From assembly GCA_001179505.1 (NCBI GenBank), contig CDMY01000830.1, forward strand, positions 1-16,481: a stretch of DNA of 16,481 nt, written 5' to 3'. The notes under the pieces are model-generated. The model was not told the origin of the DNA. It did not search any database and saw nothing but the letters and a program-made list of their open reading frames with translations. Of the stretch, positions 1 through 16,481 are shown piece after piece. Made by a program: the position numbers and the translations under genes. Numbering within the stretch: the first letter of the stretch is position 1; every line of letters starts with the position of its first letter. The stretch comes from Vitrella brassicaformis CCMP3155 (lineage: Eukaryota > Protista > Chromerida).

Positions 1-2831
1 TCTTGGGCAGCACGCGCGGCTTGAGCAGCCAGATCTGCTGCACGGGCAGACCCACCTTCATGCTCGCCGCACGGGCCACCTCCTGTGCGATCGTCCGCAG
101 CACCGCGTCCTTGTCGCCACGGTGGCGATCCGTCGTGCACGCCAGCATCGACACAAACCGACCAAACCCGCCAAAGTGCCGCCTGCTGGCCCTCTTGCTG
201 CTCTTGCCCGCCTTTGCCATGGTCAGCGCCCTGACCTCCTCCGGCCGCAGCTCACATGCGATGCCCATGCCCTCTCCCTGCTCGCTCTCCACGGGGAAGG
301 CCGCGCAGCAGCCGGGTCGCACGACGTCACACTTGGCCTCGATGGCCTCCTCGATGTCCTGAGGGATGTACTTGCGCCCCCTGACGATGATCATGTCCTT
401 GGCGCGGCCGGCGATGAAGAGCTCGCCCTTGTAGAGGAAGCCCGTGTCGCCGGTCCGCAGGAAGGGCCCTTCCTGCTTGGGTGCCTTGGTGGTGCACGAG
501 AGGCTGGCCTGGAACGTCTGGCGTGTCTGCTCCGCCATGTCGAAGTAGCCCTTGGTCGTAGAGGGAGACGACAGCCACACCTCACCCACATGGCCCTCGG
601 GCAGCAGGTGGTGGGTGGACGAATCCACTATCGCAACTGATGGATGGATGGATGGATGGAGGAAAAAAGAGAGCACATGAGGGCAGGGCAACTCGGTGGG
701 TTTGTGTGTGTGTGTGTGTCGGCATACCGGTTGTGTCGGTGGCAGGGAGTCTGCAGCCGATGACGATCTTTCGCTCGGACATGTCTGGCCAGCTGGGGCG
801 GAATCCATACCACTCCTCCTCAATGCGCACGTTGCCCTGATCGACACAAGCACATGTATACACGGTAAGTAAATGCAAATCAGACGCGCACACGTGTCCG
901 TCCGTCGATGCGTGCATTGCATCCTACGTTGGTCTCTAGCTCTAGGGCGTTGATCGAGAGCACCAGCGGCTCTGCGTCGAGGGTTGGCCGGAAGCCGGTG
1001 ACACACAGGGTGTTCTCGGCCAACCCAAAGGCAGGCAAGAAGGCGCTGGGGCGCACGCCAACCTCCCGAAACGTCTGCACACACACACACACATACATAG
1101 ACATACATGACACATACATGAGATAGTTAGTGGCCATCCATCGGTGGGAAAAGTCACTTAAGTCGGCTCACTCACATCCATGAAGTTCTTGATGGACGAG
1201 TATCTGATTGGCTCTGCTCCGCACAGCCAGGACGTCTTGCTGAGGTCGAGGGACTTCCTAATGTCCTCAGGCGTCTTGCGGCTGACCAGGTCGTAGGCGA
1301 AGTTGGGTGCGGCTGTGACCTCGCACTCCCACTTGGATAGGCCCTGCAGCCACGACCAGGGCCGCCGCACGAAATCTAGCGGGGACATCATGATCATCTC
1401 GCTGCCGAAGAACAACGTGCCACCAACAAGACCAATCAGACCTGATGATAAGAAAGGGGAGAGGGAGAGAGAGGGAGAGGGAGAGGGAGAGGGAGAGACG
1501 CATGGATGAATTGTCGGTTGTGTGTGCTTCAGTTCGTCCATCGTCTCACTGCATCCATATATGCCTACCCAGGTCATGATAGACCGGCAGCCAGCTGAAC
1601 GTGCGTACGTTGTGCCCCAGCACACTCCGCGATTGACTGTGCCTGTTGTACCAAAATGTCACGAACTCGCGCAACGGGCGATCAAACAGCGGGACGAAGG
1701 CCTCCTCGCTGCCGTCGGCCTCCCCTCCGCTGTCCTTCCTGAGGTCGTCCTTGGTGCGGCGATCGTCTCGCGGGTCCATCCCGAAGGTGGCCGTGCACAG
1801 GTGCACGTTGCTAAAAAAAAGTCCACAAGGACATAGACAGTGCACAGTGAATGCATCGCATCCGTCACTCACGCATCCATCGTGTGCCCTGCACAGCCTC
1901 TTTCTTACTGGAGTAGGTTTCCGTGTGTGACCATGACGCCCTTGGGGTGGTTGGTGGACCCCGAGGTGAACTGCAGGAAGGCCACCTGGCTGTGGGGTAT
2001 GTCGGAGGGGAGGGGGGGGAGGGACGGGCCGTGGCCGTTCTTGGAGGCCCTGTCGATGAGCTCCTGCGAGCTGAACCACCGCAGCTTGTGCCATTCCTTG
2101 CGCACCTCGTCGGTCAGCTCGTTCTCCTTTGCAGCCGGCGGCTGCGTGTGGCCGTTGGATGCGAGGGGTGCCTGGAGATGGGTGGCGATGGCCGAGGGGC
2201 GGTGGCTGTGGAGGGTGAGCTTGCAGTTGAGGCCGTGAAGGATGCGCTGGTAGAAGATGTTGGTCAGGCACACCTGCGCCTTGACCGTCGAAGCGATCCG
2301 CGTGAAACGGGGAAGGTCCGTGCTCAACTGAAACAACGAACAGTGACAGACAGACAGAGAGGCATGAACATACGAACGTGCGGGCACCGCACCCGAGTGG
2401 TCGTATGTATGTGTCCCTCCCGTCCCGTGGTGGTTGCCTAGACTGACCTTGGATGGGTCAGGAGGGTAGACAGGCACGGCGAGCACCCCACTGTACAGGC
2501 ACGCGAAGAAGGCCACGACAAAGTCGATGCCCGGCGGGTAGCACAGCAGCACCGACGCAGGCTTGCCATCCTCCCCCGCATCCAGCATTTGCAGCAGCTG
2601 CCGCCCCAGTGCCTCGGCCCGCCGATGCAGCTCCTGATAGCTGATGGCCGACTCCACGGATCCGTCCACCTTGATGAAGCGGACGGCATTGACGGCCGGC
2701 TGCACACGGGCCCAGTAGGAGATCATCCGCCGGATTGCGGGACCGTCCTCGGGCACTTCCGTCGGCGCGCCGTCACCACATGGCCACCAGCACTCCTTGA
2801 CGTAGTAGTCATATAGGCCGTTTGCCGCCAT
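1..2831 (-). CDS. Spliced fatty acyl-AMP ligase (FAAL-type adenylation enzyme), FAAL-1. Its C-terminal part runs off the window edge; it may be the loading domain of a second PKS.
   Basis: Hand-spliced exons (minus): 2831-2448, 2327-1909, 1810-1569, 1441-1176, 1074-928, 836-728, 636-<1. All introns are GT-AG with consistent phases. Motifs: [30 protein letters not shown]-loop LQFTSGSTNHPKGVMVTHGNL, SWLPVYHDLGLIG, APNFAY, CGAEPI, AFGLAENTL, GEVWLSSPS..KGY, FLRTGDTGF, GRAKDMIIVRGRKYIPQDIE, ending IWLLKPRVLPK at base 1. The WLPxxHDxGL motif and PNFAY point to the FAAL/FadD-like family rather than an NRPS A domain. Confidence 0.9.
637..727 (-). repeat. FAAL-1 intron with (AC)n near the donor and (TCCA)n at the acceptor
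   Basis: Plus strand shows (GATG)n at ~639-659 and (GT)n at ~704-719. Confidence 0.85.
1456..1498. repeat. Purine-rich (GAGAGG)n hexamer tract in FAAL-1 intron 3 (pyrimidine tract on the transcribed strand)
   Basis: ggggagagggagagagagggagagggagagggagagggagag seen directly. Confidence 0.9.
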
Positions 2832-2858
2832 GGGCAGCAAAGCAGATGCACAATCAGT

Positions 2859-2921
2859 CTGACAACGAACGCACTGGCTGACTGACTGACTGAGAGCGGG
2901 ACACCAAAATCAAATCAACAC
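2859..2921 (-). other. Probable 5'-UTR intron of FAAL-1 containing (AGTC)n
   Basis: Minus-strand acceptor TTGTCAG at 2861-2859, 27 nt upstream of the ATG. Candidate donor AG|GTGTTG at 2921 is weak. Confidence 0.45.
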
Positions 2922-3168
2922 CTATATAGTATAAAGCCGTAACAGACCCTAACAAACCCGGTGTCAGTTACGGTAGTCGACACGTGTCGCTGTCGTCGGG
3001 GAGCGCGGCGACGTTAGGTGAGCTCAGTGAGGGCAGTTACGGATCTCTCGCTAGTAGGCTCGCAAAAGGCGTTGGTCGACTTTGCCCACTGGCTGGTGAG
3101 TTGAAAAAAGCCTTGCGCCACAACAAAGGGAAGACTGCACACGACAGGACGGGCCACCGGCAGCACAG

Positions 3169-3675
3169 ATCTCTGCCGCAACGCGTGGATCGGTGATCTT
3201 CAAGATGAATGCACTCGTGGGTGCCGTCTTTCCCTCCTCGTGGCTACTGGTGAGCACCGCACACACACACAAGCACACTCACATGTGAGTGCTGCATATT
3301 CGTGGGTTGATCTGCCTGTCTGTTTGTGATTTGTGTCATGGTGATCTCAGGTCTGAGTGCATCTGCGGCAGCAGCGTGACACATCAGCCTTCGTCCCCCC
3401 CACCCCCTTAATTCAGCGGCAGCAGTGGCCTGTCCAACGCAGTGGTGCAGAGGTGTTCTGACCTGTCCCTGGCTAAGCACGGGGCCAGACCCTCTTGATG
3501 GCCACCGCCGGCGAGGGGAACCTCGGCGCACCGCACCCACCGCCAGAGAACACACAACACACATGCATGCATGCTCGTGGCTGTGTGTGTGTATGTGTGT
3601 GTGTGTGTGCAGATAGTGTCCAAGGAGTGGAAGAAGAGTGAAGAGGACTTCCGCACCGGCGAGACCCCCTGGTGA
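3169..3675 (+). CDS. Candidate small spliced plus-strand gene of unknown function; exon chain unresolved
   Basis: Strong donors CTG|GTGAGT (3096) and CTG|GTGAGC (3250); acceptors CTCAG (3350) and (GT)n-GCAG (3612). The segment 3613-3675 has GC3-rich codons reading IVSKEWKKSEEDFRTGETPW*, and 3169-3249 reads ISAATRGSVIFKMNALVGAVFPSSWLL. I could not join these in one consistent frame. Confidence 0.3.
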
Positions 3676-4252
3676 TCATAGACGCGCCTTTCATTCCCAT
3701 GAATGCACACATACATACATAGATGGCTGCGTACAGTTTCACATGGGCGGAGAGAGCTTGAGAGAGATCGATGGTAGGCAGGCCGGTCGTCGTGTGTCTG
3801 TTTGTACAGGGGGTGGAGGGGCGATGGATGGATGGAACGCTATGCGTGAGCAGCTTTCTGCTGGCTGCAGTGAAGTGAATGTATGTGCGTGGGTGAGAGA
3901 CAGAGAGGGGAGGGGGGGGTGTGTGTAAGTGTGTGTCTGACGGCCAGCCTGCCTGCTCGACTAACGCTCGTGCCATGATGTGCTTGCTGCGTTGCAACCG
4001 ACCTTAGCGGCCATACGTGAGTGAGCATTTTTGTGGCGCGGTGCGGCAGAGGAGGAGGATCCATCACAAGCCCAGCAGATGACACCAGCGGCCAGGTAGG
4101 CACATGGATGGAGTCAGTTTGAGTGCTAACCACGGTGGACGACAGACACATCCATCGATGGCGCACACACCGCCAAAGTCCGAGAAACATGGCACGCACA
4201 CACAAATCCTGCCTGCCACGTCAACGACACGCCCACCCCACCCACCCACCCA

Positions 4253-5601
4253 CTATCCATCCATCCGTCCATTCGTGTGGTGTGGTGTGGTGGCTGTGAG
4301 GGTGCTGTGAGGGTGGATGGGAGGCCACCACCATGGGCGAGATGCGACGACGGGGGCGATCTTTTGAAGAAGCGCATCGAAATGGGACCGAGGAGGATGC
4401 GTCTCCTCCTTCTTGGCCTCCTCAAAGCGCCGCTCCTCCTCCCTCTCGCGCTTCCTCTTCTCCTTCTTCCTCTCTTCCCTCTCGCCCTTGGCAGTGCTGT
4501 CGGCGAGAGATGGGGCCACTCCTCGCTGTGTCTGGATGAAGCCGACTTGCTCGAGCCACTCCCGAGATGGAGGAACAACACGAGGAACAACACTCTGACA
4601 CATCCAGAAATGCAATCTCTGCCTCTGGCTGCGTGTCTCCCTCTTGCTCTAAGTGTGTGTATCTGTGTGTCATCCCACCTGTTTTGTGGTGGGCTGGTGG
4701 GCTGGCTGATTGTGGTCAGCGCAAAATCTTTTTGCGGTGGCCAGCGCGGCGAGCATGACGGGCTGAGGGGACTCACCAGACGCCTTCATGGTCTCCTGCC
4801 GCTTCAGCTGCCTGGTGAGGTGACCCTTCTTCGTGTGCTGCCCATATGCCACACACCAACACACACACGCTGAGAGAGAGGTCTGGGCGTGTGGTATTCT
4901 CACCCCGGAGGATCTTCATGGCCACATCCGGTCCGTGACGATCTATGGTCTGCGCACACTCTCACAACGGCTGCATACACACACACACACACACACACAC
5001 ACAGCCCCCCCCCCCCCCCCCCCCCCNNNNNNNNNNNNNNNNNNNNNNNNNNNNNNNNNNNNNNNNNNNNNNNNNNNNNNNNNNNNNNNNNNNNNNNNNN
5101 NNNNNNNNNNNNNNNNNNNNNNNNNNNNNNNNNNNNNNNNNNNNNNNNNNNNNNNNNNNNNNNNNNNNNNNNNNNNNNNNNNNNNNNNNNNNNNNNNNNN
5201 NNNNNNNNNNNNNNNNNNNNNNNNNNNNNNNNNNNNNNNNNNNNNNNNNNNNNNNNNNNNNNNNNNNNNNNNNNNNNNNNNNNNNNNNNNNNNNNNNNNN
5301 NNNNNNNNNNNNNNNNNNNNNNNNNNCCCCCCCCCCACCCCCCCCCCCCCCCCCCCCCTCTCTCTCTCTCTCTCCCTCTCCCTGTGTGTGTGTGTGTGTG
5401 TGCGTGTGTGTGATCTCACCTGGACCCTGATATCATCAGCAGCCGGCCTATCGACCTCCTTGGCCATCTCGTCCCACTCGTCAGGGTCCCACTGGTCCTC
5501 TGGAGCGATCTGCATTGGTCAGTGACAAGGTGTGCACGTGTGTGGGGACGGTGGGCCGAGCATCTCACCTCGCCCGCGGCCACACCCAGCTCCAATATCA
5601 T
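4253..5601 (-). CDS. Candidate spliced gene encoding a hypothetical protein with an acidic N-part and a Lys/Glu/Arg-rich coiled-coil-like C-part; one intron spans the assembly gap
   Basis: Exon candidates: 5601-5569 (MILELGVAAGE; could start further upstream), 5509-5420 (IAPEDQWDPDEWDEMAKEVDRPAADDIRVQ, with CTGAC branch-like site, CAG acceptor and GTGAGA donor), ~4949-4904 (TIDRHGPDVAMKILR), 4837-4777 (HTKKGHLTRQLKRQETMKAS), 4701-4679, 4594-~4253 (..REWLEQVGF..GEREERKKEKRKREREEERRFEEAKKEE..). One phase conflict remains at 4904/4837. No family recognised. Confidence 0.45.
4977..5412. repeat. Compound microsatellite block (AC)n - poly-C - [gap] - poly-C - (CT)n - (TG)n
   Basis: (AC)n 4977-5003, C-run 5005-5026, C-run 5327-~5357, (CT)n to ~5382, (TG)n 5383-5412. 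Confidence 0.95.
5027..5326. other. Assembly gap (300 N), flanked by poly-C on both sides
   Basis: Run of N seen directly. Confidence 1.
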
Positions 5602-6054
5602 CTCTCCCTGCTCCAACGCCACTCCCTCCCGATACCGGTTGCCGCGACAGGTGGGGGAACAAGGGCGCATCCCGGAAGGGCATGCGCCGTTGTGCATTGC
5701 GGAATTTCGTTTCACGCGCAGTGTGCGTGCGAGCTCGAAGGTCTCTACCCTTCGGTATCTGACTGCCTGTCTCTGCTTGGCGGATCCAGTAATGGCGCAA
5801 AGACGCCCTGAGACGGGACAGGCAGTTTTATTCATCTAATTGAGGCACCGTGACTGACTTGGGTTGACTGACCTGTGTGTGTTCCTTTATCTATCGTCCT
5901 CTCATTGTGTGGAGGGTCGCCGGAGGGTCGCGTGGAGCTGGCGCATTGCCCTGCTGATTTCAGCCTGTGTGATTTGATCATATCCGGTGCTGCTTGTGAG
6001 GACTACTGAAGACCTTCACGGAGTCCTCTTGGCGTGCAGCGGGTGGCCAGCAGA

Positions 6055-9000
6055 ATGGAGTCGGCGTCACCCAAGGATCAGCGTGACGGTTCGCGCATCT
6101 CGAGTGGTCACGATGGTGCGGCAGCTGAGGCGCCGGGAGGGGGGGTGGGGAGCGGGGAGAAATGGGCCCTTCTGTCCAACCAGGGCGAAGGAGATGCCCG
6201 GGGGTCCGCTACTGACCAAGAAGGTGCCGGCGGATCCAGCTCTATCGGCAGCATGCGCCTCAGCCACGACTTCAACGACACCATCGCCCTCTACAACCAC
6301 TACCGCACTTGCGACCTCACATTTGAGGACATGGGCCTCGTGGCATCGAGTGCTAGCACGTCTGCCGCCGCCTTGGCGCCATCGCAGCCGCCCACTCCAC
6401 CACATGTGGTGCAGAGCAGGGTGGAGACCAAGACCGTCACCCACACCCACGGGCACGTGCTGTATCGGATTCTGGCCACGTGGGCGAGGTATCAGCCTGA
6501 CGAGATAGCTGTGACCATGCTCAACGCGGAGGGAGGCGTCCAGTCGCAGCTGTCGTATGGCGACCTCCACCGACAGGCCGCCCTGGTGGCGTCGCAGCTG
6601 ACCAAGCATCACGCTGCGACGGGCAAGGGCATCGGTGTGCAGAAGGGTGACCGAGTGATGCTGTGTTACCCATCGGGCATCGACTTCGTGGTGGCCTTCG
6701 TCGGCTGCCTCTATGCAGGTGAGTCAATCAATCAATGAGTGAATGAGTGAGTGAATGAATGAATGAATGTGTGTGTGACGGTTTGCTTGTGTTTGGTGTA
6801 TGCAGGTGTCGTTGCCGTCCCAGTGTGTCCTCCAGGTGAGGCAGATTGACAGACAGACAGACAGACAGACAATCCAATCAATCGGCCGTGCTCACCAGAT
6901 GCGAGCGTCATTCATTCATTCATTCATTCATCCACCTTTGCGTTGGTCTGTGTGTGTCAGATGCGTCAAAGTTTGAGAGCGACCTTCCTCGCTTCATGAG
7001 GATCATGCAGGAGACGGGCAGCAAGGCGGTCCTCACTAACGGGGCCTATCATCGTGTGGTGCAGTCCATCAATCTCAAGCTCAAGTTCAGCCGCGTCATC
7101 CACAAGCCCTCGTCCACCAAACGGACGAGCAGCAGCCGCAGCGCCAGCCTGCCCCCCGCCAGCGACAAGGGGCGTCAGGCGGCTGCCCCCTCGGCTGCTG
7201 ACCGCCAGGAGGAGTACAGTCGGGACTGGAAGGCCGTGCGGTGGATCGACACCAACGAGATGATCAAGAAGAGGCGCAAGACCCTGGCGGTCCAGACAGA
7301 CTCGTCCAGCTCAGCAGGGAGGGAAGGCGCCAGCGAGGAAGAAGACGACATCTCGCCGTCGGCGGTGCCCTTCAAGCCCCCATTCCTGGAGGCGAGGAGT
7401 CTGGCGGTGCTGCAGTTCACATCGGGCACGATGACGAGCCATCCACGGGGCGTGCAGGTCTCCCACGGCAACCTGCTGCACAACATTCATCTCATCGTCA
7501 AGAAGTTCGGCTTCGATTCGAGATTCGACCACTATAGCGTCCGGAAGCCCCCCACACCGGCGCACGGCACGTCCCTCTCGTCCATATCTGTCGCCCTCGG
7601 CAACAGTGCGGGTGGGGGCAGCTCCCGTAGCGACACATCCAGGGGGCTGTCGGCCTCCAGCTACGATTTGGACAAGATGATGGAGTTCTGGGTTTTGCGT
7701 CACCGTCTGTCGCGTGAGGTCCTGGGCCACAACGTCAGGACATTCACCTGGGTTCCCCTCTTCCATGACATGGGTACGCACAACACGCCACAATACGCCA
7801 CGGCAAAGCAAACCGATATACCGATGTATTTGTGTATGCGTATGTGTGTGCGGTGTCAGGGTTAGTCGGTTCGTTGTGTGGATCGATCTTCTTCGGTTCG
7901 GAGTTGGTCATGATGGCTCCGCACGACTTCCACCGCAAGCCGTCGCTGTGGCTGGAGGCCATGTCGAGGTATAACTGTGTGGCCACGGCCGGCCCCAACT
8001 TCGCATACGGCCTCGTCACCAAGAAGATCACCGACGAGACGCTAGAGAAGATTGACCTCAGCAAGGTGTGCGCCTTCCTCTGCGGATCCGAACCCGTCGG
8101 CCACAACACCATTCGCAAGTTCATCGTGGTACGCTCGCTGACAAGACAGCAACGATTGCTTGTCATCCAGACATTCATTGACCATGCCTCTGTGCTGTGT
8201 GTGGGCATCTATTGTTGGCAGAAACTTGAGAGTCGAGGTGTTCGTCCGAGCAGCTTCATGCCTGGATACGTACTGGTGAGCGACGTGCAGAAAAGCGATA
8301 CTGACGGCATGCGGCACTGTCACTCGTCGTTGTTTGTGTGTTTGTTAGGCTGAGAACACCCTGTGTGTGACGTGTCGCAACGACGTGGAGACCGAGCCGC
8401 TCGTCATTGCTGTTGATATGGACGGCATTCAATCAGATGTAAGTCAGGTGCAAATTGACACACCTGATCAAACGATCGTTCTTCGATGGTTCTGCTGTTG
8501 TGTGTGCGTGTGCGTTGTGCTTGTCAGGCGATCGCTGTAGTTCAGGATGAGTGGCGCGGATTCCCCGAGGACTGCAAGAACTACAAGGAGGATGAGACAT
8601 CCATCAAGCTGCTCATCGGATGCGGCACACCAACACTGGGGACATCAGGTACACACAACAGCCGATACACAAACATGACAGCTTTCCCGCTGTTCTTCTT
8701 TCTTGTCCCCTTCCGCCTTTCAGTTGTGATAGTTGATTCGACGACCCGTCAGGCGCTCCCAGAGTGTCACGTGGGCGACATCTGGGTACGGTCGGGCAGC
8801 ACGACACTCGGCTACCACGGAGATCCACAGCTGACCGATGACGTGTTCAACGGCCGGTACAGCAGGGGCAAGACGTCAGATGCCTCTATCGCCCAGAGAG
8901 GATTCCTCAAGACAGGAGACAAGGGATTCATCTACCAAGGAGGTACGCAAACGCCGCATCGTACACCTTGTTCGCAGCCATCGCCCACGTGTTGCTTCTC

Positions 9001-12000
9001 CCCTGGTCGATCCTCAGAGTTGTTTGTGACTGGTCGCACCCGTGACATGATCGTGGTCCGCGACCGTCGCTTCTTCCCCCAGGATCTGGAGGAGGAGATC
9101 GAGAAAAGCTGCGTCATCGTCAAGCCGGGAGGTGTGGTGTGCTTCGCCATGGGCGAGGAAGGAAGCGATGCCGTCGGCGTGGCGGCAGAGCTGCAGATCG
9201 ATTGCCTCAAGCAGCTGGGCGTCCGCGACTCGACCGGTCGGTCCGGCCGGAAGAACAACCCACTCAGCTGGTTCCGATGCAACGCTAGCGACATGAGCCA
9301 AGCGGACGAGTCGTTCTTCAAGAGTGTCTCCGACGACATATGGAGGGCCGTCGAGACCAAGGTCGGCCCGGCAGTGCATAAGGTGTGGCTGTTGAAGCCA
9401 CAAAGCCTCCCCAAGACGACTTCTGGCAAGCTGCACCGCTCGAGAGCCAGCCAGGAGCTGTCAGATGGAACGCTGGACGGCGTGCTTCTATCCGTGGAGG
9501 GCAAGCCTGTCCCTGTGGAGCGCCCATCCATCAAGCAGGACACGGGCGTCATCGACTACCTGAGGAGCCTACAGAGCGGAGACAACCGCAGCGAGGTCAG
9601 TTCCGCCCCCTCGTCGCCGCGCGTGGGCGACCGCCCTTCCCCATCCCTCTTGTGTGAGCGGTTCGCCATCGGCACCCAATCGCAGCGATCGCTCTCTGTT
9701 GCCACCAGCTCGGCAGGCGACATGTCGCCCACCCATGTCGGGGCTGAAGGCAGCACGCTACTGGATTCCGCAAGTGAGGCGCTCGTCACGTCGGACGATG
9801 GCCATGACTCACCATCCGGCGAGGGCGCTGATGTGGTGGCGCCCGTCACAGCGCCCCCAATGGACGACAACGTCCGCAACAAGGTGCCTCGCGAGCTCAC
9901 TCAGCTGGACGTATCGCTGATTCACGGACGTGTCCAAGCAGTGGTCTTGGAGACCGTCGTGGAAGCCGTGAGTGGCTCGGCCATCGACCCCAGCAGTGTG
10001 ACGCTCGACACGCCCCTTCCAGAGCTCGGGATCGACTCCCTCATGGCTGTCGAGATCCGCGACACTATCTCGCAGAAGGTGGGTGTGGAGATTCCCTCGA
10101 CCACCCTGTTCGACTACCCCAGTCTACACGAGGTGGTCGATTTCATCACCAAAGAGATCGTGAACCTCCGTGACAACATCGCGTCTGAGAGTGCTGAGGC
10201 GTCCCGGAGCGAGCCTGCCAGTCTCCCCAGTCCCGTCACCACGGTTACGGCGAATGCGGTGGTGATTGTGGGAGCCGCATGTCGTCTTCCTGGCCATTCG
10301 ACGTCCCCCCTGGCGTACTGGTCGATGGTCATGCAGCACACAGATTGCGTGATGGACGTGCCGCTCACTCGATGGAACATGGCCGACTACTACGATCCAG
10401 ACCCCGACTCCGTTTGGTCGGCATACGTGACGCAGGGGGCCTTCATGGAGCACACGGACCTTTTCGACAACGGCTTCTTCGGCATCAGCCCTGTGGAGGT
10501 GCCAACCATGGATCCCCAGCAGCGGATGATGCTTGAGGTCGGATATGAGGCCCTTCACTCTGCTGGCATGCCCAAAGAGAAGCTCACCGGCAGGGACTAC
10601 GGTGTCTTCATCGGATGCTGCAACAACGATTGGCAGTTTGTCAATCCATCGCAGAAGGGCAGCAGCTACTCGGGCACGGGAGGCGCAACCAGCATCGTCG
10701 CCAATCGTGTCAGCTACTGCTTTGGACTCAGGTGGGCTGTAAGACCAAGTCGATATGTCAAAGTGATCACACGTGAACTTCACGGACCCTGTCTATGTAA
10801 CTTTCGCTTTCAGGGGTCCAAGTCTGTCATGTGACACGGCCTGTTCATCGTCACTCGTCGCAATGGACACCGCAATGAAGCACATGCGAGCAGGTGAGTC
10901 ACTGCTTCTTCGTTCGCCCCACCTTCGCTTTCATTTCTGTTCGCATCTCCGTATCCATAGGCATGACTGGTGCACTGGTTGGAGGCGTCAACCTCATGCT
11001 GGCGCCGAATCTGTTCATCGCCTTCTGCAAGGCTCGGATGCTTGCTGCCGATCACAAGTGCAAGACGTTCGATGCCAAGGCCAACGGCTACGTGAGGGGC
11101 GAAGGTGTGGTGGCCCTCTACCTGCGACAAGCGGCAGAGGCGCAGGCTGACCACATGGAGCCGCTGGCGATCGTCAGGGGGACTGCGATCAACCACGTGG
11201 GCAAGAGCGTCAGTCTCACAGCCCCTTACGCCCCTGCCCAAGCCGACTGCATCCGCAGTGCGCTCGCACAAGCCGGTGTGTCGCCGGCTGACGTGACGTA
11301 CATGGAGGCTCATGGGACGGGCACACTGCTCGGGGACCCCATCGAGATGACGGGCCTCAAGTCGGTGTTTGGGAGCCACCGGACTGAGGAGAACCCGCTC
11401 ATCATCGGCGCTGTCAAGACCAACATTGGTCATTCGGAGGGACCGTCGGGCATCTCTGGTCTGATCAAGTGCATGCTGACGCTGATTCACGGCATCGCCC
11501 CTCCCAACATTCACATGACCTCCCTCAATCCGCACATCGATGTGGAGTCATTCCCAGTCATCTTCCCCGTCGAGCCCGTCGACCTGAAGTCGCGTGCCCA
11601 TGGGACCCACTTCATCGGCGGCGTGAGCTCGTTCGGCTTCGGAGGGGCCAACGGGCACGTGGTGATTGAGGCCAGCACCACCTCGCTGCCGGCTCTCGAG
11701 AAGAACGAGTCACAGATGCCGACATGGAACCACAAGTCTTACCCCTGGAGCAACATCCGTCACCCCATCCTCGACACCAAGAAGATCTGGGACATCGATA
11801 AGGATTGGAAGGTCGACGTACCGATGAGAGACGATGTCAAGGAGTTCTTTCTCGACCACATCGTGGCCAACACGCCCCTGATGCCCGGCGCGGGCTACAT
11901 CGAGCTGATGGCTGCCGTGGGGTCGCATGCAAGCAGCAGTGCCGCAGTCAGCACGGAGATCTGCCCGAGGAAGGTCGTCACCATCGAGAACCTTGCCTTC

Positions 12001-15000
12001 GAGCAGCCCATGGTGTTGAGCGCCGAGCAGGCCATCGAGATCGTGACGCGGAAGGATACAAAGGGCTTCACTGAAATCTGCAGCAGGCCGCCAGGAGCGC
12101 ACGGTGACGAGGCAAGACATGCTGTCGGGACCATCACGTCAGTGACCGACCTGAAACCGATAGCAGAAACCACGCTCGAGACGCTCCAGGCTGGCTGCAC
12201 CACTGAGGTGCCGACGAGGCTCTTCTACGAGGAGCTGAGCAAGTCTGGCCTCGGGTATGCCACACGCTTCCAGACCGTCAAAGAACTCTACATGGGCGAT
12301 GGAGAGGTGATGGCCAAGCTTTCTGCCAACTCACCAGCGACCTTCGAGGCGGGCTTCCGGGTCCATCCTGCAATCCTCGACGGCGCATTCCAGGCGACGG
12401 CCGTCCTCCTCCATTCCAACCCAGAGGCCTTCACCGTACGATCACGCACCCCTGGACGACCACGCACCCCTCGCACCCCTCGCACCCCTCGCACCCCTCG
12501 GGCAGCCACCGGCTCGAAGCCATCGTCACCGCTCGTCCCCGTGGGCGTCTCGCGAGCGGTCATCAGGACCCTCAGCAGCAAGGAGTACTGGGCTCACGTT
12601 CGCCTGTTGGAGAAGGGAGCCAACGATGCCAAGGCTGCAGTGACGCTGTACCAGGTGGTCAGCGTGTCCGGGCAGAGGGTCAACCTGCGGCCAGTCACAA
12701 CCATTGAGGAGCTATCTCTTCGCAAGATCGACTTGTCTGCGCGCATCGAGATCCCTCGCGAGCTGCTGTGGCAGCTGGATTGGCGGGAGCGCGCAGAGCC
12801 GTCCGCCGAGGACCAGCCAGCAGCCGACGCCGATGCATCCATCCTCGTCATCAGCCACGATCAGTCGTTTGCCGAGGAAGTGAGCACGTCGCTTAAGCGC
12901 CAGACGTCCGTCCTCAGCGGGCTGCCGAGCGCCGAGGCCATCGGCGAGAGTCTGGACAAGAGCGAGTGCAGCACCGTGCTGTACGTGGCGGCTCTGGAGG
13001 AGGCGAGCGATCCCGTGGACGTGCTTGACGGCTTCCTGCAGCTATGCAAGGCCATGTCTGCCCGCAAGGGCGGCTCGCTGCCCTTCGTGTGGGCGCCTGT
13101 GCTGTCGGTTGAGGGCCATGATGGGGTGCCGCCGCGGCACTCGGGCCTGTGGGGCTTCGCCAAGAGCGCTCGGCTTGAAATGGAGATGGAGATGAGCCGC
13201 CGAGTGACGATCGGCTGCATCGAGGTGGCTCAGCAGTCGACGGCCGAGTGGTGCGATGCCGTCAAGCTGGTGATGGAGAGGCAGGCAGAGGCGCCATACG
13301 AGCCTGAAGTGTCCGTCAGAGGAAAGCAGCTGATGATTCCGCGGCTCGCCAAGGCCGCGCTGCCGGTGAGGGGGGCGATTGAGCTCCACATGGCCGAGCG
13401 GGGGGCGATATCCAACCTACGACTGAGGCCCCAGAAGCAGCCGGACAACGTGCAGCTGCCCGAGGGGTGCGTGATCGTCCGTGTGCGTGCGGTTGGATTG
13501 AATTTCCGTGACGTGTTGAACGTGATGGGTTTGTATCCTGGCGACCCGGGTCCGCCTGGCGGCGATTGCTCGGGGACGGTCGTGAGTGTTGGAGCCGGTG
13601 TGACGCATCTGAGTGTGGGCGATGATGTGTACGGTGTTGCGCCAGGGTGTCTGCGGACGTATGTGGCCACGGATGCCCACTTGATGGCCATCAAGCCGGT
13701 GACCATGTCGTTCGAGCAAGCCGCGGCGCTGCCAGTCGTCTTCGTCACCGTCGAAGTCGCCTTCAGGGAGCTCGCCAAGGTCCACAAGGGNNNNNNNNNN
13801 NNNNNNNNNNNNNNNNNNNNNNNNNNNNNNNNNNNNNNNNNNNNNNNNNNNNNNNNNNNNNNNNNNNNNNNNNNNNNNNNNNNNNNNNNNNNNNNNNNNN
13901 NNNNNNNNNNNNNNNNNNNNNNNNNNNNNNNNNNNNNNNNNNNNNNNNNNNNNNNNNNNNNNNNNNNNNNNNNNNNNNNNNNNNNNNNNNNNNNNNNNNN
14001 NNNNNNNNNNNNNNNNNNNNNNNNNNNNNNNNNNNNNNNNNNNNNNNNNNNNNNNNNNNNNNNNNNNNNNNNNNNNNNNNNNNNNNNNNNTTGCTTTACT
14101 CATTTGTCTCTTTGCTTGTCTGTTTGCTTGTGTATTTGTCGTGTACGTGTCACTCAATCACTCAATCAATCAATCAATGCGTTCAGGTGATGGGTGCGTG
14201 GCATCTGCACGAGCACTGCGTCCGTGAGTGTGTTGACCTGGATCACTTCGTCATGTTCTCGTCGGTGGCGTCGATGCTGGGCAACTTCGGCCAGAGCAAC
14301 TACGCTGCGGCGAATGCGTGCCTCGACGCGCTGTCGGTGTACCGGCGGTCGAGTGGGCTGAGTGGCCAGTCGATCCAGTGGGGCCCGTGGCTCGAGCAGG
14401 GCATGGCGGCCCACATGACGCAGCAGTACCTGGACAAGGTCGGCATGCGAGGGCTGTCCAACGAGCTGGGCCTGCGGGTGCTCGGCGACGTCATGAGGTC
14501 AACCACTGCTGTAAGCTCAAGTGGTTGTCCGGCTGTGGTGGGCTGCCAGTCGCTGCAGTGGGGCAGCTTCCTGCAACGCTACGAGGTGGAGCCCTTGCCG
14601 TCGTTCCTTTCGGACGTCATCCCCGCAGACAGGGGACTGGGAGGCGGTGCAGGCCCCGACAGCGAGGTCACTCAGGCCCTGCTGCAGATGGACGACGATG
14701 CCCTCAAGGAATACGTCTACAAGACTGTCCTCGAGACGGCACAGGAAGTCTTCGGCGGCAGCGAGGACAACATCCCGCCCCTCGACGCCCCGCTGCAGGA
14801 GTGGGGCATCGACTCGCTCGGAGCGGTCGAGTTCAGGAACGCCCTCGCGGCACGACTGGGCGTCAAGCTGCCCGCCACCACTCTCTTCGACTACCCCACC
14901 CTCAGAGGCATCATTGGTTTCATCGTCTCGGAGATCCAGGGCAAGTCGGCAAGCAAGACCGGCAAGCAGCACAAAGGCAAAGCAGCAGAGGCAGCAACCA

Positions 15001-16481
15001 GGACCCTCGCCTCTGGAGCCCACCCGCGCAGCGGCGCCCTGTCTGTTCAGTCACTGGCTACCACAGACAGCGACCGGCTGGCGGTGGTGGGTCTGTCGTG
15101 CCGGCTGCCCGGCGGGTCCAACGGTGTGTCGCGGTTCTGGGAGATGCTCATGAACGAGACGCACTGCATTGAGGAGATCCCTCTGACGCGCTGGAACGTG
15201 GACGAGTGGTACGACGCGGACCCTGATGCCCGGAGCAAGATCTACACGCGCGAGGCGGCCTTCATCGACAATGCCGAGTACTTTGACAACGGGTTCTTCA
15301 ATATTTCCCCTGCAGAGGTAACGGTCATGGACCCGCAGCAGCGGCTGATGCTCGAGGTCGGCTACGAGGCCTTCCACAGCGCGGGCATGGGTCGCGAGGA
15401 GCTCCTCGGACAGAACATGGGCGTCTTCATCGGGTGCTGCAACCAAGACTGGAACTTCGTCAACATCACCGAGAAGAGCAGCAGCTACTCGGGCACGGGA
15501 GGCGCAACCAGCATCGTCGCCAATCGTGTCAGCTACATCTTCGGCCTCAAGGGCCCCAGCATGACACTCGACACGGCCTGCTCCTCGTCACTCGTCGCCC
15601 TCGACTCGGCCGTCAAGAACACCCAGCTCGGCGTCTGCCAGGACGGCGCCCTCGTGGGAGGCGTCAACCTCATGCTCTCTCCCTTCGCCTTCGTCGCCTT
15701 CTCAAAGGCCCGCATGCTCGCCCCCGACTGCAAGTGCAAGACGTTCGACGCCAAGGCCAACGGCTACGTCAGGGGCGAAGGCGCCGGAGCAGTGGTGCTG
15801 CGCCGAGCGAGCGACCTTGGCAACCGCAGCCAACAAGCGCTGGCGACCATTGTCGGGTGTGCCGTCAACCACGATGGGCGGAGCGCCAGTCTGACGGCTC
15901 CCAATGGCCCTGCGCAGCAAGAGGTGCTTCGATCGACCTTGGCTCAGGCCAGCCTGTCGCCCTCTGACGTGTCGTACATCGAGACGCACGGCACGGGCAC
16001 CGCTCTGGGCGATCCCATCGAGCTGGGCGCGCTCAAGAGTGTGTTCGGTACTGAAGGGGCGGAGGGGGAGGACGCGACGATCCGGATGGCTCATCCGCTG
16101 GTGCTGGGCGCTCTCAAGACCAACATCGGGCACCTGGAGGGATCGGCAGGCATCTCGGGGCTCATCAAGCTCATCCTCACTCTCCTGCACGGTGTCGCGC
16201 CGCCCAACCTGCACTTCCATCAGCTCAACCCCCACATCGACATGGACGGATTCAACGTCGTCCTGCCGACGCAGCCCGTCAAGCTTCTCAGGAACAAGAG
16301 CAGCCAGCAGCAAGAGCAAGACGAGGCCATGCCGGTCCTGGTGGGCGGCGTCAGTTCCTTCGGCTTCGGCGGCGCCAACGCCCACGCCCTCATCCAGTGC
16401 CACCCCATCAGCCAGTCGTCGACAACAACGGTGCAGGAGCTGCTCGAGACGGGAGGTTTGTCAGCGGCGGCCCGGCAGTCT
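6055..16481 (+). CDS. Modular type I polyketide synthase / FAS-like megasynthase, 3'-partial: FAAL-ACP-KS-DH-psiKR-ER-[gap]-KR-ACP-KS..., with an AT-less module 1
   Basis: Hand-spliced exons: 6055-6718, 6806-6835, 6961-7773, 7860-8128, 8222-8275, 8349-8438, 8528-8648, 8724-8942, 9018-10731, 10814-10893, 10961->13790 (gap), 14187->16481. All visible introns are GT-AG and phase-consistent. The ATG at 6055 follows an in-frame upstream TGA at 6007. Domain motifs are listed in the entries below. Continuity across the gap is inferred from ER-then-KR domain order. Confidence 0.92.
6451..9480 (+). other. FAAL loading domain of the PKS (FAAL-2), with degenerate ATP-binding motifs
   Basis: [73 protein letters not shown](V)[47 protein letters not shown] (Lys codon 9428-9430). 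Confidence 0.88.
6719..6960 (+). repeat. Tetranucleotide microsatellites in PKS introns 1-2: (CAAT)n, (GAAT)n, (GACA)n, (CATT)n
   Basis: Seen directly around the 30-nt exon 6806-6835. Confidence 0.9.
9932..10160 (+). other. ACP domain 1 (loading ACP)
   Basis: [16 protein letters not shown]...[12 protein letters not shown]; phosphopantetheine Ser codon 10037-10039. Confidence 0.92.
10256..11670 (+). other. Ketosynthase domain KS1 (contains two introns)
   Basis: [28 protein letters not shown] (Cys 10842-10844 on the 80-nt exon 10814-10893), [30 protein letters not shown]; catalytic triad intact. Confidence 0.95.
11761..12735 (+). other. Dehydratase domain
   Basis: HPILD start, [17 protein letters not shown] (His 11857-11859), [11 protein letters not shown] (Asp 12379-12381). 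Confidence 0.9.
12445..12498 (+). repeat. Coding 9-bp tandem repeat (CGCACCCCT) encoding Arg-Thr-Pro units inside the DH domain
   Basis: One copy at 12445-12453, a GGACGACCA spacer, then four perfect copies at 12463-12498; translates [18 protein letters not shown]. Confidence 0.95.
12760..13350 (+). other. Structural (non-catalytic) KR subdomain (psiKR)
   Basis: LWQLDWRE...ILVISHD...VLYVAAL...[11 protein letters not shown]...[12 protein letters not shown], in the usual position between DH and ER. Confidence 0.75.
13375..13790 (+). other. Enoylreductase domain, N-terminal half (truncated by the gap)
   Basis: [56 protein letters not shown]. The NADPH-binding GGVG region is not visible. Confidence 0.9.
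13791..14090. other. Assembly gap (300 N) inside the PKS, hiding the ER C-half and KR N-half
   Basis: Run of N seen directly; it starts in coding sequence and ends inside an intron (14091-14186 with (CAAT)n and a TTCAG acceptor). Confidence 1.
14187..14620 (+). other. Ketoreductase catalytic subdomain, C-terminal half
   Basis: VMGAWHLHE...[32 protein letters not shown]...SIQWGPW; catalytic Tyr 14301-14303. No A-type Trp, so B-type is likely; the LDD motif lies in the gap. Confidence 0.9.
14710..14940 (+). other. ACP domain 2
   Basis: [38 protein letters not shown]; Ser codon 14814-14816. Confidence 0.93.
15075..16400 (+). other. Ketosynthase domain KS2 (intronless)
   Basis: [28 protein letters not shown] (Cys 15579-15581), [43 protein letters not shown]. 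Confidence 0.95.

What the first reader, a model, noticed from the sequence alone, without database searches (positions are those of the whole stretch)
1..16481. Head-to-head pair of FAAL-initiated genes: a candidate eukaryotic (alveolate-type) lipid/polyketide biosynthetic gene cluster
Seen: a FAAL gene on the minus strand (ATG 2831) and a FAAL-ACP-KS-DH-ER-KR-ACP-KS megasynthase on the plus strand (ATG 6055) point away from each other, 3.2 kb apart. Established: FAAL-ACP loading followed by fully reducing modules elongates pre-formed long-chain fatty acids. Known examples are mycobacterial FAAL/PKS pairs and Cryptosporidium FAS1/PKS1 loading units. Apicomplexan and green-algal PKSs have been linked to resistant cyst or zygospore wall lipids. 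Inference: this is a clustered pathway for a very-long-chain, wall-type lipid in an intron-rich protist, where clustering is rarely documented.
Basis: partly seen in the sequence, partly recalled or inferred. Interest (0 to 1): 0.8.

Follow-up and report, generated by a model that had tools for sequence, protein, structure and literature searches.

The report
Lipid synthase genes near, not clustered
In the alga Vitrella brassicaformis a fatty-acid-primed polyketide synthase gene points away from a copy of a fatty-acid-activating gene, but another expressed gene lies between them, the activating gene is a scattered duplicate, and nothing yet shows that the two work together.

Summary
The + strand carries FAAL-ACP-KS-DH-ER[gap]KR-ACP-KS with no acyltransferase. 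The - strand carries a FAAL gene with its ATG at 2831. The nearest proteins are from Vitrella brassicaformis CCMP3155, a chromerid, so "alveolate-type" is right.

Three points change the picture:
- **The 3.2 kb between the genes is not empty.** Two RNA runs show a well-covered, spliced minus-strand transcript from about 5672 to 4253. It matches no known family and spans gap 1.
- **FAAL-1 is probably not a second PKS.** It covers residues 4-735 of the 1389-residue FAAL-ACP-reductase protein CEL95562.1 at 93% identity, right up to the window edge. It belongs to a duplicated segment (window 1-4012). The two annotated paralogs sit beside a Patched-type transporter and an aldolase, with no PKS within 10 kb.
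- **Expression differs.** RNA contigs tile FAAL-1 but barely touch the first 1.4 kb of the PKS.

Gap 1 lies in a poly-C run inside an intron and is probably continuous. Gap 2 hides at least 324 residues of ER and KR.

The divergent layout is real, but a gene cluster is not supported. Chromerid AT-poor PKSs are already catalogued. The scan has noted similar FAAL-PKS and FAAL-ACP-R genes elsewhere in this genome.

The parts
1..3200 (-). FAAL-1: the 5' part (residues 1 to about 751) of a FAAL-ACP-reductase-like gene. ATG at 2831, 5' UTR reaching at least 3041. Approximate exons: 2831-2448, 2327-1909, 1810-1567, 1445-1176, 1077-925, 860-729, 636-<1. It runs off the left edge.
   Evidence: Pfam and NCBIfam FAAL hits. 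PDB best hits are FAAL structures 7r7e, FadD32, FadD23 and 3kxw. Two introns seen as RNA joints, and an exact RNA contig at 2766-3041. Covers P0391 (CEL95562.1) residues 4-735 without breaks: 93.3% identity, dN/dS 0.43.
1..4012 (.). Segmental duplication shared with contig CDMY01000231.1 (L001): the FAAL-ACP-R gene plus about 1.2 kb upstream. There is a 595-nt deletion relative to L001.
   Evidence: blastn: window 1-3533 matches L001 12842-9299 at 88.9%, and 3526-4012 also matches. Nothing beyond 4012 matches. DNA runs show 2-5 times the contig depth of the PKS side and many variant letters over 1700-2899.
4253..5672 (-). Intervening expressed, spliced gene of no known family. Exons are about 5672-5569, 5509-5420, [intron containing gap 1], 4970-4904, 4837-4679 and 4594-4253. 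A likely 3' UTR reaches about 3761.
   Evidence: GT..AG joints at 4595-4678, 4838-4903 and 5510-5568 in both RNA runs. Sequencing adapters sit at contig ends 5672 and 4258. Codon-usage score is positive in one frame of four of the five exons. No Pfam, NCBIfam or Atlas match.
5027..5326 (.). Assembly gap 1, inside an intron of the intervening gene.
   Evidence: Both flanks end in poly-C next to CA/CT microsatellites. A donor site at 5419 and an acceptor at 4971 face the gap. DNA contigs stop at 4966 and 5420, and none bridges it.
6055..9460 (+). FAAL-2, the loading adenylation domain of the PKS, in about 8 exons. A3 motif at 7416, TGD at 8903, PKTTSGK at 9407.
   Evidence: Pfam and NCBIfam. 31-46% identical to FAAL-1 per exon, with several shared intron positions. 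Motifs A3, A5 and A8 deviate from all relatives compared.
9950..10200 (+). ACP1 (serine in GIDSLMAVE at 10028).
   Evidence: PP-binding, E 4.9e-14. Coordinates.
10259..11700 (+). KS1, split by two short introns. Cys in DTACSSS at 10833, His in EAHGTGT at 11305, His in NIGHSEG at 11422.
   Evidence: ketoacyl-synt N and C domains. Motif coordinates.
11700..12900 (+). DH follows KS1 directly after a linker of about 35 residues, with no AT. His in [13 protein letters not shown] at 11851, DxxxQ at 12373. An in-frame (PRT)n repeat lies at 12463-12500.
   Evidence: PKS_DH_N and PS-DH hits, no Acyl_transf_1. No GHSxG in any + frame. Tandem repeat.
13370..13790 (+). ER N-terminal half (ADH_N), cut mid-exon by gap 2.
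   Evidence: ADH_N, E 5.4e-11. The left flank of the gap is coding sequence.
13791..14090 (.). Assembly gap 2. It hides the ER Rossmann half and the KR N-half, at least 324 residues (about 1 kb or more). Whole extra modules cannot be excluded.
   Evidence: Paralog P0122 aligns only from its residue 325 at window 14184, and nothing of its residues 1-324 matches before the gap. The KR hit covers only profile positions 112-179.
14187..16481 (+). KR C-half (S..YAAAN at 14256), ACP2 (GIDSLGAVE at 14805) and a complete KS2 (Cys 15570, His 15981, His 16122). It runs off the right edge.
   Evidence: KR, PP-binding and ketoacyl-synt N and C hits. 62% identical to Vitrella ER-KR-ACP-KS-AT fragment P0122 and 91% to KS fragment P0121.

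Best explanation
The window comes from Vitrella brassicaformis and holds three transcription units.

(1) Plus strand: the first ~10.4 kb of genomic sequence of a modular type I PKS/FAS-like megasynthase.
- Its own FAAL domain adenylates a pre-formed fatty acid and passes it to ACP1.
- KS1 condenses it with a malonyl unit. That unit must be loaded in trans or by a distant AT, because module 1 has none.
- DH, ER and KR reduce the product fully onto ACP2, and KS2 starts the next round.

(2) Minus strand, nearest the PKS: an expressed, spliced gene of no known family. Its 5' end lies about 300 bp from the PKS 5' end.

(3) Minus strand, further left: the front 60% of a FAAL-ACP-reductase-like gene (carboxylic-acid-reductase architecture). 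It is one of at least three dispersed paralogs. It arrived here, or left from here, as a roughly 4-kb or larger segmental duplicate (dS about 0.075 against the CDMY01000231.1 copy).

The divergent FAAL/PKS layout is therefore a by-product of duplication within large lipid-megasynthase gene families, not a co-regulated pathway cluster.

Shown: domains, catalytic motifs, splicing and expression of units 2 and 3, paralogy, and the contexts of the paralogs.
Inferred: substrates, trans loading of malonate, the ACP-R continuation of FAAL-1, and absence of functional coupling.
For: - Domain scans. KS, ACP, DH and KR motifs intact. No AT.
- Organism: P0121 and P0122 are Vitrella proteins at 91% and 62% identity. 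Exact RNA and DNA contigs from organism-labelled runs.
- Intervening gene: three GT..AG joints and adapter-capped contig ends in two RNA runs, plus coding-frame signal.
- FAAL-1 as FAAL-ACP-R: the last exon is 96% identical to P0241, whose cluster holds CEL95562.1 with AMP-binding + PP-binding + NAD_binding_4. The whole in-window gene covers residues 4-735 at 93%. Nucleotide homology runs to the window edge.
- Paralog contexts lack a PKS within 10 kb.
- FAAL-1 is closer to Chromera PKS-fused FAALs (48-52%) than to FAAL-2 (about 34% over the same region), so the pair is not a local inverted duplication.
- Expression: FAAL-1 exons 1-3 are tiled in X10 and X15. PKS 5976-7499 has only two short low-depth contigs. 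These runs hold 19% and 12% of the words of 5327-13790.
Against: - Landing within a few kb of one of the KS-containing genes listed for Vitrella in PMC7464705 is unlikely by chance.
- Earlier scan notes place the CDMY01000231.1 copy in a lipid-related neighbourhood.
- The expression contrast rests on contig coverage in only two RNA runs of unknown condition. Contigs measure level poorly, and wall-forming stages may not have been sampled.
- FAAL-2 has atypical A3, A5 and A8 motifs, so a helper FAAL is conceivable.
- The ACP-R continuation of FAAL-1 lies outside the window and was not seen directly.
- Gap 1 is not bridged.
Confidence: 0.65

Rival explanations
1. It is a true functional cluster. 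The FAAL-ACP-R protein and the PKS act in one lipid pathway, and the adjacency is kept by selection. For example, FAAL-1 could select or deliver the starter acid because the PKS's own FAAL is impaired. Alternatively, the reductase-like domain could take part in hand-off or release.
For: - Both genes use FAAL chemistry.
- Chance adjacency is low (rough estimate 1-2%).
- FAAL-2 deviates from all compared relatives at A3 (one-residue insertion), A5 (G to V) and A8 (K to R, G to D), while FAAL-1 is canonical.
- Paralog locus L001 is also lipid-flavoured, with a Patched/sterol-sensing gene and a desaturase.
- Precedent from established knowledge: mycobacterial FadD-Pks pairs.
Against: - An expressed gene of no known family lies between the two.
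- There is no shared promoter.
- RNA coverage differs in two runs.
- Paralogs at L001 and L002 have no PKS within 10 kb.
- FAAL-1 carries its own ACP by homology.
- A7 and A10 of FAAL-2 are intact, and R at the A3 position is normal in bacterial FAALs.
Confidence: 0.22
2. It is a scaffolding artefact. The sequence left of gap 1 (FAAL-1 side) and the sequence right of it (PKS side) are not adjacent in the genome.
For: - No DNA or RNA contig bridges 5027-5326. Contigs stop at 4966 and 5420.
- The left side holds repeated DNA (a duplicated FAAL-ACP-R segment), which is prone to mis-joins.
Against: - Both flanks end in the same poly-C tract.
- Exons of one strand, with like depth in two RNA runs, lie on both sides. 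A donor and an acceptor face the gap.
- The duplicated segment ends at 4012, about 1 kb before the gap. DNA contigs run continuously from 3958 to 4966.
Confidence: 0.08
3. FAAL-1 is the start of a second PKS megasynthase (FAAL-ACP-KS...), so the locus is a divergent pair of PKS genes.
For: - The nearest non-Vitrella relatives of FAAL-1 are PKS-fused FAALs of Chromera (Cvel_3734, Cvel_22375, Cvel_26639).
- The continuation lies outside the window.
Against: - 93% protein and 89% nucleotide identity to the FAAL-ACP-R gene of L001 runs right up to the window edge.
- Every member of the ≥84%-identical Vitrella subfamily that was recovered has the FAAL-ACP-NAD_binding_4 architecture.
Confidence: 0.04

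Closest known systems
Coccidian FAAL-primed type I FAS/PKS (Cryptosporidium CpFAS1/CpPKS1, Toxoplasma and Eimeria PKS1)
   Same: N-terminal FAAL (acyl ligase) plus ACP loading unit, followed by KS-...-DH-ER-KR-ACP modules. They are thought to elongate pre-formed fatty acids and are linked to oocyst wall lipids (PMC3760245, PMC7464705). Apicomplexan PKSs are among the best non-Vitrella hits (Gregarina 47%).
   Different: Coccidian modules are described with a cis AT in every module (PMC3760245). Here KS1 is followed directly by DH. The gene here has many short introns, and its product and stage of expression are unknown.
Catalogued chromerid FAS-I-like/PKS multi-modular genes (Tomcala et al. 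2020, PMC7464705)
   Same: Same organism and same gene families. That paper lists the Vitrella KS genes and calls AT-less modules the hallmark of algal type I PKSs. Two of my hits have lengths that occur in its table of Vitrella KS genes (480 and 1098 residues).
   Different: A text search of that paper found no mention of FAAL or AMP-ligase loading domains. I did not find the FAAL-ACP-R family or gene neighbourhoods discussed in the passages shown.
Vitrella brassicaformis CEL95562.1 / A0A0G4EHS2 (FAAL-ACP-NAD_binding_4, 1389 residues) and paralog P0396 (1660 residues)
   Same: FAAL-1 is 93% identical over residues 4-735, with the same exon structure.
   Different: The genomic context differs. 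CEL95562.1 is head-to-head with a Patched/sterol-sensing gene and next to a desaturase. P0396 is next to aldolase II. The window copy is next to an unknown gene and a PKS.
Mycobacterial FAAL-PKS pairs (FadD32-Pks13, FadD26-PpsA and others)
   Same: A FAAL gene lies near a PKS gene. Both window FAALs score best against FadD32, FadD28, FadD21 and FadD23 models and structures.
   Different: From established knowledge, the mycobacterial FAAL is stand-alone, the PKS has no FAAL of its own, and the genes are adjacent and co-transcribed. Here the PKS has its own FAAL-ACP, the other FAAL has its own ACP-R, and another gene lies between them.
Carboxylic acid reductases and thioester-reductase-terminated A-T-R enzymes
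   Same: The FAAL-1 family has the A-ACP-R domain order. Sorangium 'thioester reductase domain-containing' FAAL-ACP-R proteins are found at 34-35% identity.
   Different: In paralog P0391 the Rossmann motif reads VTDATSAVG instead of TGxxGxxG (my reading; flagged earlier in note s1-248727). Reductase activity is therefore doubtful. The R part of the window's own copy lies outside the window.

Membership tests
Fatty acyl-AMP ligase (FAAL) | Scores better against FAAL models and structures than against acyl-CoA ligases | tested here: met
   NCBIfam: FadD32-like, PRK05850 and PRK12476 at E 1e-30 to 1e-32, against long-chain-fatty-acid--CoA ligase models (PRK07768 4.7e-21; others ≥4e-13), for the FAAL-1 C-terminus. 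The ranking is similar for the FAAL-2 pieces, although the CoA-ligase model PRK07768 scores best on two of them. PDB: FAAL structures at 3e-22 to 1e-20, fatty acid CoA ligase at 1e-6. Only pieces were scored, so no whole-protein cut-off could be reached.
Fatty acyl-AMP ligase (FAAL) | ANL core motifs A3, A5, A7, A8 and A10 | tested here: inconclusive
   FAAL-1 is canonical at A3, A5, A7 and A8; A10 is cut by the window edge after LPK. FAAL-2 has intact A7 (TGD) and A10 (PKTTSGK). It deviates from all eight relatives compared at A3 ([11 protein letters not shown], one residue inserted), A5 (YVL|AEN) and A8 (GRTRD..RDRRF).
Fatty acyl-AMP ligase (FAAL) | FAAL-specific insertion between A5 and A6 | tested here: inconclusive
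   FAAL-1 has about 50 residues where Legionella FAAL 3kxw has about 35, between its residue 350 and the VxIVD strand. The segment is long enough but its sequence could not be aligned.
Fatty acyl-AMP ligase (FAAL) | Hand-off to a carrier protein rather than CoA (fused or partner ACP) | tested here: met
   FAAL-2 is fused to PP-binding (E 4.9e-14). For FAAL-1 this is known only by homology: paralog P0391 has PP-binding at 871-913. Actual lack of CoA ligation cannot be tested with these tools.
AT-less (trans-AT-like) fully reducing type I PKS module | KS with Cys-His-His, followed by DH with no AT between | tested here: met
   DTACSSS, EAHGTGT and NIGHSEG are present. About 35 residues separate the end of KS from PKS_DH_N. 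No PF00698 hit and no GHSxG motif.
AT-less (trans-AT-like) fully reducing type I PKS module | Complete DH, ER, KR and ACP set in one module | tested here: inconclusive
   DH and ACP2 are present. Only the ER N-half and the KR C-half are seen. Gap 2 hides at least 324 residues, and ER and KR could even belong to different modules.
AT-less (trans-AT-like) fully reducing type I PKS module | A trans-acting or distal AT that supplies malonyl units | not tested
   None lies in the window. Paralog fragment P0122 carries an AT after its KS, so a later module of this gene may have one.
Biosynthetic gene cluster | Pathway genes directly adjacent | tested here: not met
   An expressed, spliced gene with no family match occupies 4253-5672 between the two.
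Biosynthetic gene cluster | Co-expression | tested here: inconclusive
   In RNA runs X10 and X15, FAAL-1 and the intervening gene are tiled by contigs, while PKS 5976-7499 is nearly bare. Contigs are a poor measure of level, and only two runs of unknown condition were laid.
Biosynthetic gene cluster | Linkage conserved at related loci | tested here: not met
   The paralog loci on CDMY01000231.1 and CDMY01000424.1 have no PKS gene within 10 kb of the FAAL-ACP-R gene. Orthologous loci in Chromera could not be fetched.
FAAL-ACP-R (carboxylic-acid-reductase-like) tri-domain protein | A-ACP-R domain order | not testable with these tools
   Only the A part lies in the window. The rest is inferred from 93% identity to P0391 (AMP-binding, PP-binding, NAD_binding_4) and from homology reaching the window edge.

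The most novel reading that the evidence does not exclude
The PKS's own FAAL domain is crippled (A3 insertion, A5 G to V, A8 G to D). The neighbouring, well-expressed FAAL-ACP-R* protein, whose reductase is dead, then serves as a detached starter-loading or docking partner for the megasynthase. That would be a split loading system and a true two-enzyme lipid cluster in an alveolate, assembled by segmental duplication.
Probability: 0.1. Interest if true: 0.7.

Novelty: new member of a known kind. Interest (0 to 1): 0.27.

Why it matters
If the two genes did work together, this would be a rare example of a lipid biosynthetic cluster in a free-living relative of apicomplexan parasites. It would also give a handle on how resistant wall lipids are primed.

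As it stands, the value is in annotation:
- It documents one more AT-less, FAAL-primed PKS of Vitrella.
- It shows that the FAAL-ACP-R family is spread by segmental duplication into unrelated neighbourhoods.
- It reveals an unannotated expressed gene.
- It flags two assembly gaps, one of which removes about 1 kb or more of coding sequence from the PKS.

It also warns against reading adjacency of members of large gene families as a cluster.

Tried and rejected
- **Word search with the FAAL-1 C-terminal ORF.** It returned only bacterial FAALs. The in-window FAAL-1 already exceeds the 656-residue length limit, so the blank said nothing about the gene's own product.
- **Exact look-up of the 782-residue ORF 8486-10831.** Not on record. 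I never retrieved the annotated products of the window's own PKS and FAAL-1.
- **Joints 2893->4275 and 2893->3813.** I first read these as a long spliced leader joining the upstream exons to FAAL-1. I rejected that because both anchors lie in microsatellites, (GTCA)n at 2873-2893 and (CCACA)n at 4275-4292. Dozens of DNA contigs share those anchors, and the first joint also occurs in DNA runs.
- **Local inverted duplication as the origin of the pair.** Rejected: FAAL-1 and FAAL-2 are only 31-46% identical, and FAAL-1 is nearer to Chromera FAALs.
- **Reading frame of the intervening gene.** It could not be settled. Exon 4970-4904 has a stop in the phase that continues into exon 4837-4679. The gene may therefore have exons hidden in gap 1, or a short upstream ORF followed by a 150-residue ORF starting at MKASGESPQ.
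- **Blank searches.** Pfam, NCBIfam and the ESM Atlas gave nothing for the intervening gene. Rfam found no RNA family in the window.
Full report
**Observation**

On the + strand:
- Pfam finds AMP-binding pieces in three open frames (6034-6735, 6846-7862, 7832-8350).
- Next comes FAAL C-terminus + PP-binding + KS N-terminus in 8468-10831.
- A small exon holds the KS cysteine (DTACSSS at 10833).
- Frame 10879-13790 holds KS C-terminus, the KS C-terminal extension, DH and the N-terminal half of an ER.
- After gap 2 an open frame to the window end holds the C-terminal third of a KR, a second PP-binding domain and a complete second KS.
- No acyltransferase domain or GHSxG motif occurs anywhere. KS1 is followed by DH after about 35 residues.
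- KS1 and KS2 have Cys-His-His. Both ACPs have the DSL serine. DH has its His and DxxxQ, and KR has S...YAAAN.

On the - strand:
- AMP-binding/FAAL pieces run from an ATG at 2831 (stop codon just upstream) to the left edge, ending '...LLKPRVLPK'.
- NCBIfam and PDB searches place both adenylation domains with fatty acyl-AMP ligases (FadD32, FadD23, FadD28, 3kxw, 7r7e), well ahead of nearly all acyl-CoA ligase models.

**Organism**

The KR-ACP-KS2 stretch is 91% identical to CEL93322.1 (P0121) and 62% to the fragment P0122. Both are 'unnamed protein product [Vitrella brassicaformis CCMP3155]'. Gregarina, Chromera, Symbiodinium and bacterial PKSs follow at 47% or less.

DNA-like runs of one labelled organism hold 84-96% of the window's sampled words. 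Several RNA contigs match exactly.

**What the reads add**

I laid four runs on 1500-7499. X1 and X3 behave as DNA. X10 and X15 behave as RNA, with spliced joints and adapter-capped contigs.

- *FAAL-1 is expressed and spliced.* Introns 1811-1908 and 2328-2447 have GT..AG ends on the minus strand. An exact contig at 2766-3041 gives a 5' UTR of at least 210 nt.
- *The supposed intergenic region is transcribed.* Three further minus-strand GT..AG introns (4595-4678, 4838-4903, 5510-5568) define a spliced RNA. It runs from about 5672 to about 4253 and probably on to about 3761. Contig depths are as high as or higher than those on FAAL-1.
- *This intervening gene shows coding signal.* Four of its five exons have a clear coding-frame signal. 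It matches nothing in Pfam, NCBIfam or the ESM Atlas.
- *Its 5' end faces the PKS.* The 5' end is about 300 bp from the most upstream PKS RNA contig (5976-6126). The gene that shares a divergent promoter region with the PKS is therefore this unknown gene, not FAAL-1.
- *The PKS is almost uncovered in RNA.* In both RNA runs 5976-7499 is nearly bare, although DNA covers it evenly. X10 and X15 hold only 19% and 12% of the words of 5327-13790.

**The gaps**

*Gap 1.* Both flanks end in poly-C beside CA/CT microsatellites. A splice donor at 5419 and an acceptor at 4971 face the gap. Exons of the same strand and similar RNA depth lie on both sides. It is most simply an unsequenced homopolymer inside an intron. 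No contig bridges it, so I rate a misjoin at about 8%.

*Gap 2.* It cuts the ER coding sequence mid-exon and resumes in an intron. The paralog P0122 aligns only from its residue 325, and the KR hit starts at profile position 112. At least 324 residues (about 1 kb or more) are therefore missing, against 300 N. Hidden extra modules cannot be excluded.

**What FAAL-1 is**

- The word search could not see its own product because of the length limit.
- The exhaustive search found P0241 at 96% identity. P0241 is 1389 residues long and its cluster contains CEL95562.1 / A0A0G4EHS2 of Vitrella.
- That family has the architecture AMP-binding, PP-binding, NAD_binding_4. This is the carboxylic-acid-reductase layout.
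- The window's gene covers residues 4-735 of CEL95562.1 without a break: 93.3% identity, dS 0.075, dN/dS 0.43.
- Nucleotide homology to its locus (L001, CDMY01000231.1) runs at 88.9% from the window edge to 3533, and on to 4012, with a 595-nt deletion.
- FAAL-1 is therefore part of a segmental duplicate and almost certainly continues as ACP and a reductase-like domain, not ACP-KS.
- In CEL95562.1 the Rossmann motif reads VTDATSAVG rather than TGxxGxxG. This agrees with an earlier scan note that calls this reductase dead.
- DNA runs show 2-5 times the single-copy depth and many variant letters over 1700-2899, as expected for a multi-copy family.

**Is the neighbourhood conserved?**

- At L001 the FAAL-ACP-R gene is head-to-head with a Patched/sterol-sensing gene and followed by a fatty acid desaturase.
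- At L002 (P0396, CDMY01000424.1) the neighbours are aldolase II, a glycosyl hydrolase, a carboxylesterase and an amine oxidase.
- Neither locus has a PKS within 10 kb.
- FAAL-1 and FAAL-2 are only 31-46% identical, though they share several intron positions.
- FAAL-1 is closer (48-52%) to PKS-fused FAALs of Chromera (Cvel_3734, Cvel_22375, Cvel_26639). The pair did not arise by local inverted duplication.

**Mechanism**

The PKS most likely takes a pre-formed fatty acid through its own FAAL-ACP loader and extends it by fully reduced C2 units. Malonyl units would be supplied in trans or by a distal AT. This follows from the domain order and from what is established for FAAL-ACP loaders and coccidian FAS/PKS enzymes (PMC3760245, PMC7464705).

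One caveat: FAAL-2 deviates from eight compared relatives at A3 (one-residue insertion), A5 (G to V across a splice junction) and A8 (K to R, G to D). A7 and A10 are intact.

The FAAL-1 family protein would adenylate a fatty acid and load its own ACP. What its degenerate reductase domain does is unknown.

**Cluster or not**

Against a cluster:
- The intervening gene of no known family.
- Separate promoters.
- Unequal RNA coverage in two runs.
- Non-conserved linkage among the paralogs.
- The PKS has its own loader.

For a cluster:
- Chance adjacency to one of the KS-containing genes listed for Vitrella in PMC7464705 is low.
- The other copy sits in a lipid-flavoured neighbourhood.
- FAAL-2 has odd motifs.

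I put a functional link at about 0.2 and the plain reading at 0.65. The plain reading is that two members of expanded lipid-megasynthase families lie near each other after a segmental duplication.

**Novelty**

- AT-poor multi-modular PKS/FAS-like genes of chromerids are catalogued (PMC7464705).
- FAAL-primed coccidian PKSs are known (PMC3760245).
- FAALs in Apicomplexa and FAAL-PKS fusions in other eukaryotic groups are surveyed (PMC12820801).
- Earlier notes of this scan describe similar FAAL-PKS and FAAL-ACP-R* genes on other pieces of this genome.

This is a new, incompletely assembled member of known kinds.

Noticed in passing
window 4253-5672 (-), 3' UTR to about 3761: An unannotated-looking, well-covered, spliced gene with no family match. 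Exons a-b encode MILELGVAAGE/IAPEDQWDPDEWDEMAKEVDRPAADDIRVQ. Exons d-e hold a 150-residue ORF rich in K, E and R. Exon 4970-4904 has a stop in the connecting phase, so the mRNA may carry a short upstream ORF or have exons hidden in gap 1.
   Followed up: partly
window 7416-7450, 8255-8360, 9017-9080: The PKS's own FAAL domain deviates from eight relatives at A3 ([11 protein letters not shown], one extra residue), A5 (YVL|AEN instead of YGLAE, across an intron) and A8 (GRTRD..RDRRF). It also has a 25-residue in-frame segment (8936-9016) that is probably an intron.
   Followed up: partly
window 12463-12500: A perfect in-frame 9-nt tandem repeat (CGCACCCCT x4.2) encodes (PRT)n inside the DH domain, between the DxxxQ motif and the last strands.
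   Followed up: no
window 14916-16340 vs P0121 (CEL93322.1, 1.4-kb contig): A 480-residue KS fragment on a tiny separate contig is 91% identical to KS2. It may be the KS of a further module of this gene or of a close paralog, which points to unresolved repeated modules in the assembly.
   Followed up: partly
window 5327-13790: Marine sediment and microbial mat metagenomes from three studies hold 6-50% of the sampled words. Vitrella or a very close relative seems to occur in such samples.
   Followed up: no
P0241, P0392, P0393 (MMETSP transcripts): The transcriptome-derived FAAL-ACP-R proteins match the window copy at 95-96% in the last exon but at only 76-92% elsewhere. They look like mosaics assembled from several paralogs.
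   Followed up: no
L001 7995-8294 and 9299-8704 vs window 3526-3533: Relative to CDMY01000231.1, the window copy lacks 595 nt. That stretch holds most of a called 90-residue gene (weak Rieske hit) lying between the FAAL-ACP-R and Patched genes.
   Followed up: partly
window 2873-2893 and 4275-4292: Short (GTCA)n and (CCACA)n tracts are shared by dozens of genomic contigs. They produce false 'joints' (2893->4275, 2893->3813) when reads are laid.
   Followed up: yes
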